The notes: generated from the letters alone by a model not told the origin. Positions 1 to 7,699 are shown, numbered from the stretch's first letter. The stretch: DNA of 64,000 nucleotides from Asterias rubens (GCF_902459465.1 NC_047062.1:8308001-8372000), one strand, 5' to 3'. Made by a program: numbers and translations.

Positions 1-3000
1 CCCAGTTTTCGCGGTAGCCTTGTTTCTTCTTACATTCCCCGCATCTGTCGGTGCCGAAGTCTGCCGGTCGGCCAGTCCTTCCTGCTACGCACTCTGTGCA
101 GTTATTGATGTAAGCGCCTCCGTTGCACGAGAAGGCGCAATCCAAGGTGGCCTCGCCGTTGCAAACACCTTCGCAGTCCCGCCGGGCGTCACCGTTGCAG
201 ACGCCGGCACAGTCAAAAATACCACGGCATACCTCTGAGAAAAGGAATAACGTACATTGTAAATGAGAGGAAATGGAAGCGTTTACTATTGGTAACTACT
301 CAAAATAATTGTTTTGACATAAAAACATACTTGGTAACACTTCGTCATTGAGAGTTTGGGAACTCTTTAAAAAAGGGCATAATAGCACAAAAGAAAACAA
401 TTGCAGGACCCATACAAACCGGTTCAGTATGGCTGTGTGTGGAATATTGTCCACAATGTGGCTAACGGTCCCTTCACTGTGTTGATCTCTTTTGTTCCCA
501 GATCCATAACGTTTAAACACAATATTCATATCATTATACAATTATAAAATGCTTTTCTTAAGGTTATGTTGCATTAATGCCTTCTGGTGGAATCTAAACT
601 TCTCAATTTTGCAAAATGATAACAATACATGTATATTACACTGCAAAAAATGGGGTAATGAAGTTGACACCATGGGTGTTATGTCAAATATATATACCGA
701 AAAGAGAATCAAAAGACTGTTAACACCAAGGGGTATTAAAATAACACTTATGTGTGACTGCCGAACAATTACATTGGTGTTATTTTAAAGGAACACGCTG
801 CCTTGGATCGGACGAGTTGGTCTATAAAAAGCGTTTGTAACCGTTTGTTTCAAAATGCATTTGGTTGGAATGATGTTTTAAAAGTAGACTACAATGATCC
901 ACACAAATTTGCCCCAAAATTGCGTGTTTTTCCCTTTACTGTGCGAACTAACACGGTCGTCCAAAGGGAGTAAAAATTTGACTCCCATAAATGGCCGACC
1001 GTGTTAGTCGACGAGGTAAAAGGAAAACCGTGCAATTTCGAGACATGTTTGTGTGGACCATTGTATTCTACTTTTACAACATCTTTCTACTTATTTGCAT
1101 TTTATAACAGACGGTTACAAACGCTTTTCAAAGACCAACTCGACCGATCCAAGGCAACGCGTTCCTTTAACACCATGTGTGATGTAAGTTTTGATTCTCT
1201 TTTCTGTGTATATAAATAATAATAATAACAAATTCTTATATAGCGCATTTCACAATAAACCGTATCAATGTGCTTTACATTAGTCCCCTGGTCATTGGGC
1301 CTATAACATCCCTTTAATCTTTCTCAGCTCCTGTGGCGCTCCGAAGGCTTTGTCATTCACAATATCAACCTAAACCCTCGCAGGTACCCATATTTATACC
1401 CCTGGGGAGAGAAACAATTAGTAAAGTATCTTGCTCAAGGACACACGTGTCACGACCGGGGTTCGAACCCACACTCCGGTGACTTGGCATCAGAACTTGA
1501 ATTCGAAGCTCTTAACCACTCGGCCGTGATACTCTATTATGTGACAACATCCATGGTATCAGTTTTAATACCCCAGTTATTGCAGTGTAAAGACATAGGC
1601 CTAATTACAGGAGCTGATCTTACCTGCTTCTTCTCCGGTGAATATCTCCACGATCGTCTTACACATGTCATTCCCGCTGGCGACTCCAGTGATCCAGTAG
1701 AAGGGGTTCTCCGTCCAATCATCGGCTGAGCTTCCGGTAAAAAAGTTTATGGGTATGTCAAAAGCCTTCGTCACTATACCTATCGCTTCAGTGGCGAGTA
1801 CGCTGCATCTGTCAATATTTTGCGGAATGTCTAAGATGGACTCTTTGAAGCTTTCCAGCATATCTTCTTTTCCTTCCTGGTCGCCACTTTCCTCTATCTC
1901 AAGAAAGGTGTCGCATATCTCATCAACTCCACGCGTCCGTGTGGCGATGCTTATCAGGTTGTCAATGTCTTCAAATGGGATGTCCTCCTCGAGCATGAAC
2001 TGAATTAAGCTCTCCTTGTTCGTGCAAAACGTATAGAGGTAGTCTGAGAAGAAATCAAACATGGCGGCCGCTACGTTGAACCCAAAGTCTATCGCACTGA
2101 TGTCTCTGTTGAGAATGGCCTCTATGCCAGGGCAGACGTCGTCCTTCTCATAGCTTTCAATCCCGATGGCCTCAAGCAACGTCTCCAGCAATCGGTCGGT
2201 ATCAATGTCCCGGAACATGGGACGGTTGTCACTGTCCTCGCCCTCGAACAACGGCACGGCTACTGCGTCGCATTCTTTTCTGACCAATTCGGAATCAATC
2301 TCAGAGATAGAATCACAAAAGCCTTGAATTTCCTGAAGCTCAATATCGGTGTACTGTGAAATCAGTGGACTGACCTGCGTGCACACAAGACCAAGCCCAG
2401 CTCCCATCACGTCACTATTCCATACCGTACCCAAGGCAGAAATAATCAACTTAAACGACACTCCTGGTAAGACCATGCCCGGTGTCCAATCCAAGATGTC
2501 ATCCCACTCAGCCAAATCAAATGATGGGTCGACGATTGCATCCCAATCGACAGTCGGGCCGTCTCCTAAGTAAGCATCCACAAGGGCTACACACAGTGCA
2601 TCGACGTTTTGGAAACCAGTGTTGTTGTAGACGTCAAACGTCAATTCATTGGCGAAGGCATACTCGAAAAACTCACCACACGTGGCTTCACTGCTCAGTA
2701 CATCCTCCCACCTGTCTCTTATGTCGACTAGCATGCCCGATACATCGTCTGCTGTGATGTCGTAGAAACTAGAATTAATTGCCTGAACACCACGGCAGAA
2801 GGAGGCTGGATCATCGGAAGAGGTAAGGTAAGTCATCAACTTCAACAAGACATCTCGGCTACCTATTGGCTCTCGGTCGGTGGAATTGAAATAATCGAAG
2901 ATCGAAGTGTAATTCTCGTCGGTGGCAATCCAGCAAGGTTCGTCAATCCAGGAAAATACTCGCACCGTGAGTGCATCGAGGGCTTCATGAGCACCGGCCC

Positions 3001-5278
3001 GGAGTCCAGTCTGGTTTAGTGTTATAAGCTCGGAGAAAAAGTCACACACTCCAAAAGGATGCAAATCTACTTGCCATGTCCATGCTACAGTGTAGAGGGC
3101 GTCGTATGCTATATATTCGTTAATATAATACTCATGTTCATGCCAGTAATCGAGGAAAAAGTCGATGAATATATCCTCTTGCTCTTCCTCCCACCTCTCC
3201 CAGTCAAATACTTCAATCAAACCATACCAACCCCAGTACTGACAGACTTCCTCAAAATGACTGTAGTCCCTGCTCTCTAAAGCCGCACACATAGCTTCAA
3301 AATCACTACCCACTATGGACGAGTTGAAAGAGTCGCACATCACCTGGAAGGCTTTACTCGAATTACTCGACGAGTACATACTGCCGAATAATTTGATGAG
3401 TTTTTCTGCGGGAACTTCCGCCAAAACTGCGAATGGACCGTACAGGTGAGGCTCAAACACGGAGTACCAATGAAGCAACTGATCTTCGTCATCCCACCAA
3501 TCAGACCCGACCGAGTCGTACTCGCTCGATTCGTAAGATCCCCTTATTGTGTGTCTGTCATGCTCATCTCGGTCCTCGATCTTGTTAAGAATATCCTCTG
3601 TATCAATGTAAGTGCTACCCCCACTATTGTTGAAGGCGCTAACCACATCCAAGCACATTTCTTCAACATCGATACCAAAAAGATCACCAAATATTGGCTG
3701 TCCAATCTGTACACAAAGATCATAATCTTCCAAAGCACTCAGTAAATTAACTGTCAAGTTGTGTGCAAGACCCCGGTGATCTACCAGAACATCAGTTACA
3801 TTGAAATAGTCACCAGTACCGTTGAAATAGTCACCAGTACCGTTGAAATTGTCACCAGTAGCATTGAAACAGTCACCAGAAGCATTGGAATAGTCACCAG
3901 TACAATTGACATAGCTGTAGTTGTTATAACCGTACTGCTTAAAATCATGGCACTGCTCAATGTATGAAATTTCATAACCGGCGATAGCGCTTAAAATGTG
4001 ACCAATGATGCCACCGACACCGGTCACATTATGACGAAGAAAGTCTAGTTCTGAACCTTCACCCCACCATGACGACACCGAACCTGACCCAGAATCTGAC
4101 CCAGAATCTGACCCAGAATCTGACCCGGAATCTGACCCAGAATCTGACCCAGAATCTGACCCAGAATCTGACCCAGAATCTGACCCAGAATCTGACCCAG
4201 AATCAGATCCAAAATATGACCCCATAGAGTGAAAATCACTTCCACCAAAAATACCCTCTTTACCATAGCAACCTCTTGCCCAAATTTCCACCACGGATAG
4301 CATGATTTCTTCCGTAATGTAACGGACGATGTCTTTCACTGATTGGGAGTCACTGCGGATGTAATCAGTTACTCCCATGCAAGTACCGTTTGATTCAAAG
4401 ACGTCAAACCCAAATCCTTTGCTCAGCGGTTCGTGAAGCCAGTAAAACACACCAGAAAATGGAACATCTTCGAACTCCTCCCATTCATCATCTTCTGACT
4501 CATCGGCGTCTACCGATCTCCTTTTCCGTTTACGTTCACCACCTCCCGGAGCCCCCGTTTCTCCTCTGAAATCGTCACCCTCCTGTTGTTCCCCTTCAAC
4601 CCACTTCTCATCGCAGAACTCTTCAACACCCGTAACGGGCCGGTCATTGGACACCGCGTCTACAACTAAATCACAAGCGGCAAACACTTCTTCTGACAGA
4701 AGAAACGACACTGGTGCCAAGTTCTCGCATACGATTCCGGCCGAGAGGAGAATTGTGTCAGATTTGACCACCCTGCTGAAAACGGACACAACATCTTCGA
4801 ATGAAATGTCATCAAAAATTACACCAGGACTTGGGAATAAACGGTCATCTATGTCAAGTTCGCCCCCGCTGCTCCATGACCAACTTAGCCCCGTATCTTC
4901 AGGGTCGCTAAAATTACCAAAGTCAAACTCAACACTTTCGTCAAACCTTCCCAGGTCAAACTTACCCCCCTCTTCGAATTGCATCAAGTCGAACTCGCCA
5001 CCTTCCTCGAATTGCATCAAGTCGAACTCGCCACCTTCCTCGAATTGATTGGGGTCAATCTTAACTTCACCCTCAAGTTCGCCGATGTCAAATTGACCCA
5101 AAAACCCATCCGTTTCACCAGCAGTCTCAAAGTCAGTCCCTCCCACATCAAATACATCATCCATTCTTTCTTCACCACCGAATCCCCCAAATCGCCCAGG
5201 ATCTACCTGCCCTATGGAGGCATGCGGAAGAGCAAGCAACACTATCAGGGGAAATATTCCTCTCCCCCTTAGATCCAT
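1..5278 (-). CDS. Large acidic secreted protein (signal peptide, furin site, GSDS repeat, N-glycan cluster, Cys-paired helical modules, DCxGxCNG repeats); 3' partial
   Basis: The ORF track gives 1601..5329 (1242 aa). The likely start is Met18 at 5278 (context caacaacATGG), followed by the hydrophobic MDLRGRGIFPLIVLLALPHASIG. Strong donor GCAG|gtaaga ends the exon at 1624 (phase 1). Acceptor ttccttttctcag| opens an exon at 234 that reads in frame without stops to the window edge: EVCRGIFDCAGVCNGDARRDCEGVCNGEATLDCAFSCNGGAYINNCTECVAGRTGRPADFGTDRCGECKKKQGYRENW. Confidence 0.85.
789..1166. mobile_element. TTAA-flanked MITE, family B (Kolobok-like), intronic
   Basis: TIRs aggaacacg(c/t)tgccttggatcgg(a/t)cgagttggtc ... 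gaccaactcgaccgatccaaggcaacgcgttcct, with TTAA at 785-788 and 1167-1170. Related copies at 23557, 25981 and (partial) 19420. Confidence 0.8.
1212..1531 (-). mobile_element. tRNA-derived SINE
   Basis: On the minus strand: tRNA-like head (...ggccgagtggttaagagc...gggttcgaaccccggtcgtgacac), conserved gtgtccttgagcaagatact core and (tta)n tail. Homologous to the copy at 54521-54855. Confidence 0.75.
3795..3912 (-). repeat. Coding 21-bp tandem repeat encoding N-x-[T/S]-G-D-x-[F/S] (N-glycosylation cluster)
   Basis: ttgaaatagtcaccagtaccg-like unit about 5 times; protein NCTGDYS NASGDCF NATGDNF NGTGDYF NGTGDYF NVTD. Confidence 0.9.
4084..4210 (-). repeat. Coding 12-bp tandem repeat, (GSDS)10
   Basis: Ten ccagaatctgac-type units counted on the plus strand; they translate as GSDS on the minus strand within the large ORF. 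Confidence 0.95.
4925..5050 (-). repeat. Coding 33-bp tandem repeat (QFEEGGEFDLM-like)
   Basis: Two near-perfect copies of tcgaattgcatcaagtcgaactcgccaccttcc plus degenerate copies; protein QFEEGGEFDLM QFEEGGEFDLM QFEEGGKFDLG RFDESVEFDFG. Confidence 0.85.
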
Positions 5279-7699
5279 GTTGTTGAAGCTTGGAGTAGGT
5301 ATAATATTCCAATGAGGTTGACAAACCAACTAAAGTTGGCTGTTCTTGCACCGATCGCAAGTATGATATTACCAACTACTATCCAAGTTTTTTGGTTTTG
5401 AGGCAGAAGCTTAGCTTCGAGAGAAAAATCAATATCTCAATACCTTCCAGGCAGGCATTTATCGCCATTAATTATTTACGGCGTTTGCACCATAAAGAAC
5501 TTCCACTCATTCTTATCTGGAACATTTCACGAGACTTTACCGTCCTTGATCGATTTATTTATTGTTATAAAAAAGTTGCATTTCTTTGTGTACGCTGGTT
5601 GCCATCCAAGGATTTGTTTGAAGAAATTGGCATCAAAAAGATGTGTTAAAGACACTGTACACATTTTGGTAATTTGTCTCTCACTAACGGTGTATCCAAC
5701 ACAAGCACAACATTACAAAATATGTGAAAATTTTGACTAACTTGGTCAAACTTTTATTTTGTATATTTTTTGTCTGGACTTATTTTGTATAATATTATGC
5801 TTTCGGGGTTTTCTGATAACAGTAAATACATACAATATCATAATTATCACATGTAAGATGTTGGACATTGTTCTAGACTTAAAAAAATAAGTGATTCAGT
5901 TACTTGAAACCAGTATCACAATTTATAATTATAAATGAACACCCACCAGAGTCATGCAATCGAAAGGACAGACTGTGTTTTGAACCATTTGAACACCTTA
6001 GACGCACCAGTCCATCGGTGCCACCCACTGCCACGTGATGGTCAGTATTGCGTCACCTTGCGTTCATTGTAGGAGCTAGCAGGGGCAGTGACATAATGTT
6101 TCGATTTAACAATTAATCCTCATCTTCACAGTCTCCCCACCTCCATCTCTTGGTGCCCGATCGCGCAAACTAATAAACTGTGCCCTTCCAAGTTTCGATG
6201 ATTGTATCAGCAGCTAATTTTATATTTCGAACACATTTTTATTGTTACTTTCCCTGATTCCACTACGGGTCTATGCATAAAGAGAGTAAGGGTCTATGTA
6301 AATGCTTGATGGTGCAATACCATGGTCTCCAATTTTAGCATCAAGCAAGAAAAGGTTCACATGAATCGTAAATTTTATAAAGTGATCGTTGGACTCACTT
6401 GTTTCTTCCCATCGTAAAACATACACGCCTGTGGGTAAGGATGAAACTTCATTGTTTTAAGGAATTTTTAAGTCATCATCATCAATACTACAATTCATTT
6501 TATGTCCAATCCATACACAAAATAAACAATGTGAAATATATTTATATTATGTGATGTGAGTAGGCAGTGACCAAGTAAATAAATTTGTACAATACAACCC
6601 AAACGAACAGAGAACTTCTGAGGATTTTGGTACTTTTTGCACAAAACACAATGTCCACAGATTTACATATAATTTACACCGTTTGAAGATAATGATAGTA
6701 GAAAGCGTACCTTAATATATTAGTTGCTGAGGTGCAGTAGTTTTTGAGAAATGAGTAGAACAATGTAACGAAAATACGTTTATACATGCTAAAATAATTT
6801 TCGTCTCATGATCTCTGAGACGAAAATGATTTTCACGACATTGTTTTACTCATTTCTCAGAAAATACAGCACCTCAGCAAGTACCTTTTTTCAGGGAAGC
6901 TTTCTACCATCATTATCTTCAAACTGTGTTAGTTTAATGTAAATCTGTTTTGTTTTTTTGTCCTACAAAATTCTCAAAGCAATTGATTGAATGAAACCTA
7001 TATATTTGGTAACGATCAATGGAGACCTGTTGATTAAACGTTGTGAGAAACGGGTCCCTGTGTAGTTTGTAACGTAGTTTTTGAGAAAGAAATACTTACA
7101 CAAAACAATAAAAGACTTCAGCTGAAGGCCTTTTATTATGCATCTGAAAGCTCACAAAGTAAAGCACAAGAAAGTTTGTTTTTGTTTTGTTTTCATTTTG
7201 CAAATCATTGATTGGGCAGAAATTTCACAGGTTTGTGATTTTATGACGGTTTGGATACCACCAAGTGAAAATACTGGTCCATGACAATTACCAAAGGTGT
7301 CCTGTGCTTTAAATGCGGCATTAATTCAAATCCTTCTTTCTCAAAACACATGCACAATTAACCGATGAAGCGTTCGTCCAAATCTGTGGTCAGTTGAGTG
7401 AAAACCTATATAATTGGGTTATGTTCATTCAAAGTTTAGCCGACGTTTTTTTCCCACTCTAGTTCATTGACAGTATTTGCAGGTACGTCACGAAGGAGGC
7501 ACGTAGTACCCCACAGTCCCTCCCGCTGGTAATCCCCCCCCCCCCTGTTAGGTATCTGGGTCTTTGGAATATAACAACATTACAGAAATAAAATTTCTTG
7601 GAATTAGAAATATACTCACACGTAGCAAAATTGATTTGATTTGACCTTCACGACAGATTTTCACTCATAAAAAAAAAAAAATGACAGCAACATTTTTGG

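What the first reader, a model, noticed from the sequence alone, without database searches (positions are those of the whole stretch)
1624..5278. Uncharacterised giant-exon acidic secreted protein with proteoglycan or biomineral-matrix hallmarks
Seen: a 3655-nt single coding exon with a signal peptide, a strongly D/E-rich composition and a G/F/D/E-rich repetitive N-terminal segment ending in RKRKRR|S. The rest has recurring amphipathic segments bracketed by Cys pairs (e.g. LCVQIGQPIFGDLFGIDVEEMCLDVVSAF, VCTQVSPLI...GFCDSISE). Established: R-x-[K/R]-R is the furin consensus. Inference: a proprotein releasing an acidic propeptide and a mature polyanionic glycoprotein. The Cys-bracketed helices resemble saposin-like half-domains. 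It is a candidate skeletal-matrix, adhesive or egg-coat component, and I do not recognise a named family.
Basis: partly seen in the sequence, partly recalled or inferred. Interest (0 to 1): 0.7.

Follow-up and report, generated by a model that had tools for sequence, protein, structure and literature searches.

The report
Acidic first exon of REJ receptor
The 3.65-kb acidic "secreted protein" exon is real and transcribed, but it is only the first exon of a 25-exon starfish gene for a single-pass membrane protein of the polycystin-1/REJ family, and it encodes three copies of an undescribed helical eight-cysteine domain so far found only in echinoderm-type genes.

Summary
On the minus strand, ATG at 5278, signal-peptide-like start, 20% D+E, RKRKRR at residues 249-254, Cys-bracketed helices, and an exon end at 1624. 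A transcript contig splices 1624 to 234 (GT..AG), so the exon is not a whole gene.

Guided by the Acanthaster planci homologue, I built a 25-exon, 2816-aa model (C1:8313278-8281336). In order it has: signal peptide, acidic leader, three copies of a ~290-aa domain (D1-D3, all in exon 1), Cys-rich repeats, a TIG-like domain, REJ domain, GPS motif (HL|T), one transmembrane helix and a 166-aa tail.

The D domain has eight invariant Cys across 29 copies. It has no Pfam or PDB sequence match. It folds confidently as all-alpha (pLDDT 85.8) with no solved structural relative; the only fold matches are two unnamed or uninformatively named AlphaFold DB entries that I take, from accession ranges only, to be echinoderm.

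The polybasic site sits in a predicted disordered D1 loop and is conserved in Patiria and Holothuria. A furin-type cut is therefore plausible, but it would trim a membrane receptor ectodomain, not release a free matrix protein. Saposin, biomineral, adhesive and egg-coat readings are unsupported.

Verdict: a new variant of a known kind (single-TM REJ proteins, like sea urchin SpREJ8/9). Function is unknown.

The parts
5279..5365 (-). 5' UTR, minimum extent
   Evidence: Transcript contig of run X1 reaches 5365. There is no ATG between there and 5278.
5207..5278 (-). Start codon and signal-peptide-like residues 1-24 (MDLRGRGIFPLIVLLALPHASIG)
   Evidence: Sequence. Patiria and Holothuria homologues have the same layout. 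SignalP not run.
4838..5206 (-). Acidic G/F/D/E-rich low-complexity leader (residues 25-147), including three 11-aa QFEEGGEFDLM repeats
   Evidence: TRF finds a 33-nt period at 4974-5047. One repeat unit is absent in the X1 contig (joint 4973/5007). The character of this region is conserved in Patiria but the sequence is not.
3632..4837 (-). Domain D1 (residues 148-549), first copy of the 8-Cys all-alpha domain, interrupted by three long loops. Conserved Cys at 184, 202, 222, 300, 337, 443, 522, 542.
   Evidence: Profile matches, alignment A2. In the AF2 model the helices have pLDDT about 80-94 and the loops are below 50.
4517..4534 (-). Polybasic RKRKRR (residues 249-254), a candidate proprotein-convertase site in the D1 loop between Cys3 and Cys4
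   Evidence: RRKRR in Patiria and RKKR in Holothuria align at the same place. Residues 237-274 have pLDDT below 50. Cleavage itself is not shown.
4080..4222 (-). (SDSG)n run, residues about 357-399, in the D1 loop after Cys5. Candidate O-glycan, glycosaminoglycan or phosphorylation region.
   Evidence: TRF 12-nt period x 11.9. The aligned regions in Patiria and Holothuria are Ser-rich. pLDDT is below 50. Any modification is inferred.
3799..3914 (-). GDYFNGT heptad repeats carrying N-x-S/T sequons, residues about 455-493
   Evidence: TRF 21-nt period x 5.5. Sequon list.
2564..3436 (-). Domain D2 (residues 615-905). Conserved Cys at 648, 664, 679, 745, 782, 828, 867, 896.
   Evidence: 206-bit match to the A1 profile, jackhmmer 161 bits, eight invariant Cys columns.
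1625..2506 (-). Domain D3 (residues 925-1218). Conserved Cys at 966, 988, 1003, 1049, 1085, 1122, 1158, 1206.
   Evidence: AF2 model has pLDDT 85.8, pTM 0.76 and is all-alpha. It has no solved structural relative.
1622..1624 (-). End of exon 1 (1624) and GT of the splice donor (1623-1622). If the intron were retained, the ORF would end 7 codons later, at 1601.
   Evidence: Sequence CAG|GTAAGA. Spliced contig in run X1.
235..1623 (-). Intron 1 (1389 nt), full of repeats
   Evidence: Joint 234/1624 with CT..AC ends. There is very high repeat-derived read depth at 601-1600 in all four runs.
1..234 (-). Most of exon 2, which runs on 56 nt beyond the window start. It begins the Cys-rich CxGxCNG/CGxC repeats.
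   Evidence: Spliced contig. 66% identity to A. planci residues 764-867. Gene model.

Best explanation
The stretch is the first coding exon of a roughly 32-kb, 25-exon gene on the minus strand (C1:8313278-8281336). The gene encodes a type-I membrane glycoprotein of about 2816 aa in the polycystin-1/REJ family, of the single-transmembrane kind.

Exon 1 supplies the outermost part of the ectodomain:
- a signal peptide;
- a disordered acidic leader;
- three tandem copies (D1-D3) of an undescribed domain of about 290 aa, all-alpha, strongly acidic, with eight invariant cysteines (presumably four disulfides).
D1 carries three long disordered loops: one with a conserved polybasic site, one Ser/Gly/Asp-rich, and one with repeated N-glycosylation sequons.

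The remaining exons add Cys-rich repeats, a TIG-like domain, the REJ domain, a second conserved polybasic site, a GPS motif with HL|T, one transmembrane helix and a conserved tail of about 166 aa.

Shown here: the gene structure, the splicing of exon 1 to exon 2, the domain repeat and its invariant Cys, the REJ and GPS matches, conservation in starfish and sea cucumbers, and purifying selection.

Inferred mechanism: the protein goes through the secretory pathway and is glycosylated. It is cut by a furin-type convertase in the D1 loop and again after the REJ domain, and self-cleaves at the GPS as other family members do. It sits on the cell surface as non-covalently or disulfide-held fragments. 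The fast-evolving polyanionic D array would be the distal ligand-, cation- or matrix-contacting module, and the REJ-GPS stalk a sheddable or force-sensitive tether. Tissue and ligand are unknown.
For: Homologues and gene structure
- phmmer against 1.84 billion representatives: A. planci XP_022081345.1 (P0001, 2383 aa), E 3.6e-110, covering residues about 503-1220. That protein has a REJ domain (216 bits) and GPS.
- P0001 matches 25 colinear minus-strand exons from the window down to C1:8281342.
- Splice junctions were chosen by homology. The first one equals the junction seen in RNA.
- The model is 2816 aa with one hydrophobic segment at about 2626-2650.
- Pfam REJ hits exons 13 and 14 (63.1 and 39.9 bits), and GPS hits exon 24 (31.3 bits against a cut-off of 22.5).
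- Full-length homologues: A. planci and Patiria miniata at 52% identity, Holothuria leucospilota at 44%.

The D domain
- jackhmmer finds three copies in exon 1 (120, 161 and 342 bits) and 1-6 copies in each homologue.
- Eight Cys columns are invariant across 29 copies.
- In this genome the domain occurs only here and in one paralogue on C11.
- AF2 model: pLDDT 85.8, all helices.
- No Pfam hit shared by any two of the 29 copies. No PDB profile hit. No PDB fold match: Foldseek best E 0.18, VIA best Z 4.6.
- The only AFDB cluster matches are two entries listed without organism, one at TM 0.67.

Processing sites and conservation
- Polybasic sites are conserved in position, and the D1 site lies in a loop with pLDDT below 50.
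- Acidity is conserved across all arrays: D+E 15-21%, K+R 4-8%.
- pN/pS is about 0.19.
Against: - Only exon 1, the exon 1-2 junction and 234 nt of exon 2 were seen in RNA. The other 23 junctions rest on homology and splice consensus.
- Expression was seen in one run of unknown tissue (X1, labelled RNA only as a guess, though its contig is spliced). Three 2026 RNA runs show zero depth on the exon.
- No cleavage, glycosylation, disulfide pairing or surface location was tested.
- Signal peptide and transmembrane helix rest on simple inspection and a Kyte-Doolittle scan, not on dedicated predictors.
- PLAT and channel domains, typical of polycystin-1 proper, are absent. Any mechanism borrowed from 11-TM members may not transfer.
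- A retained-intron or early-polyadenylated isoform ending at 1601 would give a free secreted D array and cannot be excluded.
Confidence: 0.85

Rival explanations
1. One reading: a stand-alone secreted acidic proprotein. The ORF is read through to the stop at 1601, for example by intron-1 retention or early polyadenylation. That gives a 1225-aa soluble polyanionic glycoprotein or proteoglycan acting as skeletal-matrix, adhesive or egg-coat material.
For: - The ORF stays open only 7 codons beyond the donor and then stops, so a retained intron would yield a clean secreted product.
- It has a signal-peptide-like start, 19 N-x-S/T sequons and an acidic SG repeat that fits the usual glycosaminoglycan attachment context.
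- After GPS or convertase cleavage, the D array could in any case be shed from the membrane form.
Against: - The only transcript contig covering the exon end is spliced to exon 2 and continues about 2.2 kb beyond the window.
- Gene order and structure (giant exon, intron, Cys-rich exon 2) are conserved in two independent foreign genomic contigs and in annotated full-length homologues of three species.
- No unique read depth was seen between 1601 and 1623.
- The sea-star footprint protein paper does not mention REJ, GPS or polycystin.
Confidence: 0.07
2. A sperm-surface egg-jelly receptor in the strict sense. Like sea urchin SpREJ1, it would sit over the acrosome, bind the sulfated egg-jelly proteoglycan (ARIS in starfish) and trigger the acrosome reaction, with the fast-evolving D array as the species-recognition surface.
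For: - It carries REJ and GPS and has a single TM, as SpREJ1 does (PMC1934368).
- Exon 1 is 30% identical to A. planci against 62% for the rest of the protein. Faster change in the distal part is what gamete-recognition modules show.
- Expression looks restricted: zero depth in three RNA runs.
Against: - A polyanionic module is an odd binder for a polyanionic sulfated ligand.
- SpREJ1 has EGF and C-type lectin domains, which are absent here.
- The closest described architectures (SpREJ8/9: one TM, no known domain upstream of REJ, Ser-rich N-terminal region) are expressed mainly in embryos, not specifically in testis (PMC1934368; PMC13672419).
- pN/pS of about 0.19 shows no sign of positive selection at the coarse level tested.
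- The tissue of run X1 is unknown.
Confidence: 0.08

Closest known systems
Sea urchin SpREJ8 and SpREJ9 (Gunaratne et al. 2007, PMC1934368)
   Same: [quoted passage not shown] SpREJ9 has extremely Ser-rich stretches near the N-terminus, as D1 here has its (SDSG)n loop.
   Different: Orthology was not tested, because I could not obtain their sequences with the tools. Those proteins were reported with partial REJ domains, whereas the A. planci, Patiria and Holothuria homologues match the REJ model end to end. No repeated 8-Cys domain was described for them.
Sea urchin SpREJ1 (sperm receptor for egg jelly 1)
   Same: REJ domain, one TM near the C-terminus, heavily glycosylated ectodomain.
   Different: SpREJ1 has EGF and two C-type lectin domains at its N-terminus and is testis-specific. 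Here the N-terminus is the acidic D array, and the tissue is unknown.
Polycystin-1 (PKD1) and PKDREJ
   Same: A REJ domain followed by a GPS motif with HL|T just before the first TM. A large modular ectodomain.
   Different: Those proteins have 11 TM segments, a PLAT domain and a channel-like C-terminal part, with LRR, WSC, lectin and PKD repeats in front. None of these is found here or in the homologues.
Uncharacterized automatic gene models: A. planci LOC110974195, Patiria miniata LOC119721034, Holothuria leucospilota 'Polycystic kidney disease 1-related protein'
   Same: Putative orthologues, inferred from colinear full-length similarity; no tree was built. 44-52% identity over most of the length, with the same three-D-domain array (three in Patiria and Holothuria), Cys-rich repeats, REJ, GPS, TM and tail.
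   Different: The A. planci model starts inside D1 and lacks the signal peptide and leader, probably a truncated model. None of the three carries any annotation for the N-terminal 1200 residues.
Saposin-like (SapB) domains
   Same: Short amphipathic helices tied by disulfides.
   Different: A saposin domain is about 80 aa with six Cys. This domain is about 290 aa with eight Cys and roughly 14 helices. There is no Pfam SapB hit and no saposin among the fold matches.

Membership tests
PKD1/REJ family (proteins with a REJ domain, PF02010) | REJ domain present | tested here: met
   PF02010 hits this gene's exons at C1:8293930-8294169 (63.1 bits) and C1:8293371-8293610 (39.9 bits), both over the 25-bit cut-off. 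Homologues score 216-256 bits over model positions 1-451.
PKD1/REJ family | GPS motif with HL|T/S just upstream of the first TM | tested here: met
   Exon 24 translation scores 31.3 bits on PF01825 against a cut-off of 22.5. The sequence ...TCTTDHLTEFTLM lies about 20 residues before the hydrophobic segment and is conserved in six homologues. Autoproteolysis itself is not testable here.
PKD1/REJ family, polycystin-1 type (11 TM) | PLAT/LH2 domain after TM1 and a multi-pass, channel-like C-terminal part | tested here: not met
   The hydropathy scan finds one hydrophobic segment in the C-terminal half. There is no PLAT or PKD_channel hit in P0001:1850-2383 even at E up to 10.
Single-TM REJ proteins (SpREJ1/8/9 type) | Signal sequence, REJ, GPS and exactly one TM near the C-terminus | tested here: met
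   Signal peptide and TM were judged by inspection and a Kyte-Doolittle window only.
Orthologue of SpREJ8 or SpREJ9 | Reciprocal best sequence match, and presence of the D-domain array in the urchin proteins | not tested
   The urchin sequences could not be fetched. The only hint is an AFDB cluster entry (A0A7M7P0B2, listed without name or organism) matching the D3 model at TM 0.67.
Saposin-like domains | A bundle of about 80 aa with four or five helices and six Cys; Pfam SapB_1/SapB_2 match | tested here: not met
   No Pfam hit for the whole exon or for 29 domain copies. No saposin among the listed top rows of Foldseek PDB or VIA-align.
Proprotein-convertase (furin-type) substrate | An R-x-K/R-R motif that is exposed and conserved | tested here: met
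   RKRKRR at 249-254. RRKRR in Patiria and RKKR in Holothuria are at the aligned position. The loop has pLDDT below 50. A second site, RRRRR at about 2317, is conserved in all seven sequences aligned, including a crinoid.
Proprotein-convertase (furin-type) substrate | Actual cleavage in vivo | not testable with these tools
   Needs protein chemistry.
Proteoglycan core protein (serglycin-like SG repeat) | Ser-Gly repeats flanked by acidic residues that carry glycosaminoglycan chains | tested here: inconclusive
   The motif is present: (SDSG) about 10 times at residues 357-399. The aligned loop in the homologues is Ser-rich but not an SG repeat. Glycosaminoglycan attachment cannot be tested here.

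The most novel reading that the evidence does not exclude
The ~290-aa, eight-cysteine, all-alpha acidic domain is a new protein fold that arose in echinoderms and was multiplied inside giant single exons: 3 copies here, 12 or more in the C11 paralogue, 6 in sea-cucumber and foreign-contig relatives. It would serve as the specific ligand-recognition head of a class of single-pass REJ receptors, for example as a cation- or polycation-sensing module, or as the unidentified starfish sperm partner of egg-jelly components.
Probability: 0.12. Interest if true: 0.8.

Novelty: new variant of a known kind. Interest (0 to 1): 0.45.

Why it matters
The PKD1/REJ family includes the main human polycystic kidney disease gene and the classical sea urchin sperm receptors, yet most echinoderm members have no known function. 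[quoted passage not shown]

This work gives that unknown front part a defined anatomy in a starfish gene of the same single-TM architecture:
- a repeated, disulfide-stapled, polyanionic helical domain with a confident model and no solved relative;
- two conserved convertase-type sites and a GPS site.

That turns an "uncharacterised acidic protein" into testable questions. What does the D array bind? Is it shed? Does the fold exist outside echinoderms?

There is also a caution for database users. Several "proteins" in metagenome-derived collections are just giant first exons of such eukaryotic genes.

Tried and rejected
- Pfam and PDB sequence searches with the whole 1225-aa ORF: no family, and only chance hits at E of 0.1 or worse.
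- Word-indexed search of 5.8 billion proteins with residues 400-1225: nothing. The exhaustive phmmer run was needed to find relatives. Most of its 40 hits (P0005 onward, apart from P0007 and P0009) match only the SDSG low-complexity run and were discarded.
- Own-genome search with the ORF: only low-complexity hits besides itself. The paralogue appeared only with the domain profile.
- Self-BLAST for internal repeats printed nothing. The repeats are too diverged (15-20% identity) and needed profile iteration.
- ESM Atlas by features (best 0.77, unnamed bacterial clusters) and by shape (TM 0.34 or less): no lead.
- Saposin-like reading: rejected (see membership test).
- Sea-star footprint (adhesive) protein reading: the catalogue paper has no REJ, GPS or polycystin term. 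Its supplements were not searched.
- Literature searches for REJ proteins in starfish and for A. rubens plus polycystic kidney disease: nothing relevant.
The link to SpREJ8/9 therefore stays untested.
- ARAGORN on intron 1, for the tRNA-like stretch near 1440-1530: no tRNA.
- The tissue of run X1 could not be learned, because run names are coded.

Full report
**1. The observation**

The window has one outstanding ORF, on the minus strand from 5329 to 1601 (1242 codons; the next longest is 684). The first ATG is at 5278, in a good initiation context.

That gives an exon of 3655 nt, or 1218 codons plus one base.

The features of the translation are as follows.
- Composition: 11.2% Asp, 9.1% Glu, 9.6% each Gly and Ser, 7.1% Phe, and only 5.1% Lys+Arg.
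- Start: MDLRGRGIFPLIVLLALPHASIG|Q.
- Three QFEEGGEFDLM repeats near the N-terminus.
- RKRKRR at residues 249-254.
- An (SDSG)n run at 357-399.
- GDYFNGT repeats that carry N-glycosylation sequons.
- 19 N-x-S/T sequons in all, and 27 Cys in the read-through ORF, 26 of them within exon 1.

**2. It is transcribed and spliced**

In run X1 (same species label as the window, 2014), one 4686-nt contig covers 3830..1624. It then jumps to 234..1, skipping 1389 nt whose ends CT..AC read GT..AG on the minus strand, and runs on about 2.2 kb past the window start. A second contig covers 4193-5365, which places the 5' UTR end at 5365 or beyond.

Three 2026 RNA runs show zero depth on the exon, so expression is not ubiquitous.

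The 35 listed differences between the X1 contig and the reference split into 20 synonymous and 15 non-synonymous changes. Against 453 and 1755 sites, this gives pN/pS of about 0.19, the signature of a constrained coding sequence.

**3. What the exon belongs to**

Pfam, PDB sequences and a word-indexed protein search gave nothing. An exhaustive phmmer run found Acanthaster planci XP_022081345.1 (P0001, 2383 aa) at E 3.6e-110. Its residues 21-766 align to residues about 503-1220 here. The rest of P0001 carries a REJ domain (216 bits) and a GPS motif.

Searching the window's own genome with P0001 gave a colinear series of minus-strand exons from the window down to C1:8281342. I chose splice sites by homology plus GT/AG and frame. 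The first junction found this way is exactly the one seen in RNA.

The model has 25 exons and 2816 aa:

| Residues | Feature |
|---|---|
| 1-1218 | Exon 1 part |
| about 1220-1445 | Cys-rich CxGxCNG/CGxCGG repeats |
| about 1445-1540 | TIG-like domain (weak Pfam TIG hit in the Patiria homologue) |
| about 1850-2290 | REJ domain |
| about 2317 | RRRRR |
| about 2570-2606 | GPS motif ending ...DHL\|TEF |
| about 2626-2650 | Single hydrophobic segment |
| last 166 aa | Gln/Pro/Met-rich tail with a conserved C-terminus |

REJ and GPS were confirmed directly on this genome's exons: 63.1 and 39.9 bits for REJ, 31.3 bits for GPS, all over the curated cut-offs. No PLAT or channel domain is present.

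Full-length homologues exist in several echinoderms.
- Patiria miniata: 2767 aa, 52% identity.
- Holothuria leucospilota: 2836 aa, 44% identity.
- A second, longer type is found in sea cucumbers (4079 and 4040 aa).
- A crinoid relative shares only the part from the Cys-rich repeats onward.

I did not verify that independently, but the best matches being starfish proteins fits it.

**4. Anatomy of exon 1**

Iterated profile search on the homologue set shows that exon 1 holds three copies of one domain of about 290 aa.
- D1 spans residues 148-549, with inserts.
- D2 spans 615-905.
- D3 spans 925-1218.

Patiria and Holothuria also have three copies. The long sea-cucumber protein and P0002 have six, P0003 has three, P0007 three to four, and P0004 one.

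In an alignment of 29 copies, mean column identity is 18%, but eight Cys columns are invariant. D1 has the same eight Cys plus two extra in an insert.

In the starfish genome the domain occurs only in this gene and in one paralogue on C11. There a single 4184-codon open frame holds at least 12 copies, upstream of its own REJ exons.

The 'proteins' P0002 and P0007 come from genomic contigs of unknown organisms. In these, the giant ORF is followed by an intron and an exon 53-63% identical to exon 2 here. In the contig encoding P0007, a GTAAGT donor sits at the homologous place. They are therefore first exons of the same kind of gene, and wherever the downstream sequence could be inspected the domain is linked to this gene architecture.

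**5. Fold**

AlphaFold2 on D3 with the 29-copy alignment gives pLDDT 85.8 and pTM 0.76, with about 14 helices and almost no strand.

The fold searches gave the following.
- Foldseek against the PDB: nothing (best E 0.18, TM below 0.2).
- An exhaustive structural alignment against 48,161 representative chains: best Z of 4.6, over 80-90 residues, which is noise for helical proteins.
- A profile of the domain against PDB sequences, and Pfam on each of the 29 copies: nothing consistent.
- ESM Atlas: no lead.
- AlphaFold DB clusters: only two significant entries, A0A7M7P0B2 (TM 0.67 over residues 9-290) and A0A2G8JU25.

From memory of accession ranges, I take those two entries to be sea urchin and sea cucumber proteins. 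The tool lists no organism for them.

I conclude that this is an undescribed domain family whose fold has no solved relative. A weak fold search does not prove the fold is new.

**6. The polybasic site and the loops**

Aligning the N-termini of the starfish, Patiria and Holothuria proteins places RKRKRR, RRKRR and RKKR at the same point, just after the third Cys of D1. The AF2 model of D1 has confident helices (pLDDT about 80-94) and three loops below pLDDT 50:

| Loop residues | Content |
|---|---|
| 237-274 | Polybasic site |
| 342-418 | SDSG run |
| 454-493 | NGT repeats |

Conservation over the starfish-sea cucumber split, together with exposure, makes a proprotein-convertase cut plausible. 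However, the piece upstream of it contains three helices and three conserved Cys of D1. It may therefore stay attached by disulfides or by packing rather than leave as a propeptide.

A second polybasic run between the REJ domain and the GPS region is conserved in all seven sequences aligned, including the crinoid.

**7. Rates and composition**

Exon 1 is 30% identical to A. planci. Exons 2-25 average 62%. The acidic character is kept in every D array examined: D+E 15-21% and K+R 4-8%. The constraint therefore seems to act on the fold, the cysteines and the charge rather than on the surface sequence.

**8. How it most likely works**

Shown here: a transcribed gene for a signal-peptide-bearing, single-TM protein containing REJ and GPS, whose distal ectodomain is a triple 8-Cys helical acidic domain.

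Established for the family (PMC1934368): REJ proteins are large glycosylated membrane proteins. The GPS is cleaved in SpREJ3 and human PKD1, with the halves staying associated. SpREJ1, 8 and 9 have one TM. SpREJ8/9 have no known domain upstream of REJ, and SpREJ9 has Ser-rich N-terminal stretches. SpREJ8/9 are expressed mainly in embryos (also PMC13672419).

Inferred: the starfish protein is a surface receptor or adhesion-type molecule processed at two convertase sites and at the GPS. The polyanionic D array would be its contact module, binding cations, basic ligands or matrix, and the REJ-GPS stalk a tether that can release the N-terminal fragment.

I put 0.85 on the architectural statement and much less on any specific ligand or tissue.

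**9. Rivals**

- A free secreted isoform through intron retention is possible in principle, since the stop lies 7 codons after the donor. No read supports it.
- A true sperm egg-jelly receptor is possible from family membership. It lacks the lectin domains of SpREJ1-3, and nothing is known about testis expression.
- Biomineral, adhesive or egg-coat roles have no support beyond acidity.

**10. Novelty**

The gene family is known, and automatic annotations of the homologues exist as 'uncharacterized' or 'PKD1-related'. Three things appear undescribed, as far as Pfam, the PDB and the searchable literature show:
- the D domain as a defined, repeated, 8-Cys all-alpha unit;
- its confinement to giant single exons in the two paralogues of this genome and in two foreign genomic contigs;
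- the conserved processing sites.

I class this as a new variant of a known kind, of moderate interest.

Noticed in passing
G000:C11:16499781-16529239 (+): A paralogue on another chromosome has a single open frame of 4184 codons holding at least 12 copies of the same 8-Cys domain. It is followed by exons matching the Cys-rich repeats and the REJ domain, and probably corresponds to the 4040-4079-aa sea cucumber proteins P0046 and P0060.
   Followed up: partly
window 4973-5007: The X1 transcript contig lacks one 33-nt unit of the QFEEGGEFDLM repeat. This is an in-frame copy-number difference between individuals or alleles. The same contigs differ from the reference at about 2.4% of positions.
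   Followed up: partly
window 601-1600 (intron 1): Repeat elements here have very high read depth in all four runs, with many 'opposite strands' joints around 806-1145. This suggests an inverted-repeat (MITE-like) element at about 790-1170. There is also a tRNA-like stretch near 1440-1530 that ARAGORN does not call as a tRNA, perhaps a SINE remnant.
   Followed up: partly
L008:1266-7340 and L009:643-4284: Database 'proteins' P0002 (2024 aa, Logan SRR32120561) and P0007 (1213 aa, ENA ERZ27293330) are ORF calls on giant first exons of homologous eukaryotic genes. Exon 2 lies downstream in both contigs, and in L009 a GTAAGT donor sits at the homologous position. The source organisms are unknown.
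   Followed up: yes
window 1-234 and C1:8305688-8308234 (exons 2-4): The Cys-rich CxGxCNG/CGxCGG repeats after exon 1 have no Pfam match. They do resemble repeats in very large bacterial surface proteins carrying Big_9, Cadherin-like and T9SS sorting domains (for example P0044, E 9e-117 over about 21% of the query).
   Followed up: no
G000, several contigs (C7, C3, C20, C15, C16, C40, C11, C1): The Pfam REJ model hits about ten separate loci in this genome, including a tandem pair on C7 at 21.59-21.60 Mb. The REJ family is therefore expanded in the starfish, as it is in sea urchins.
   Followed up: no
C1:8281336-8281916 (last exon): The cytoplasmic tail ends in a motif conserved from starfish to Holothuria (…SGSKASLTGHF/H). 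It also contains PPHY in this species (PPSY in Patiria), a possible WW-domain binding motif.
   Followed up: no
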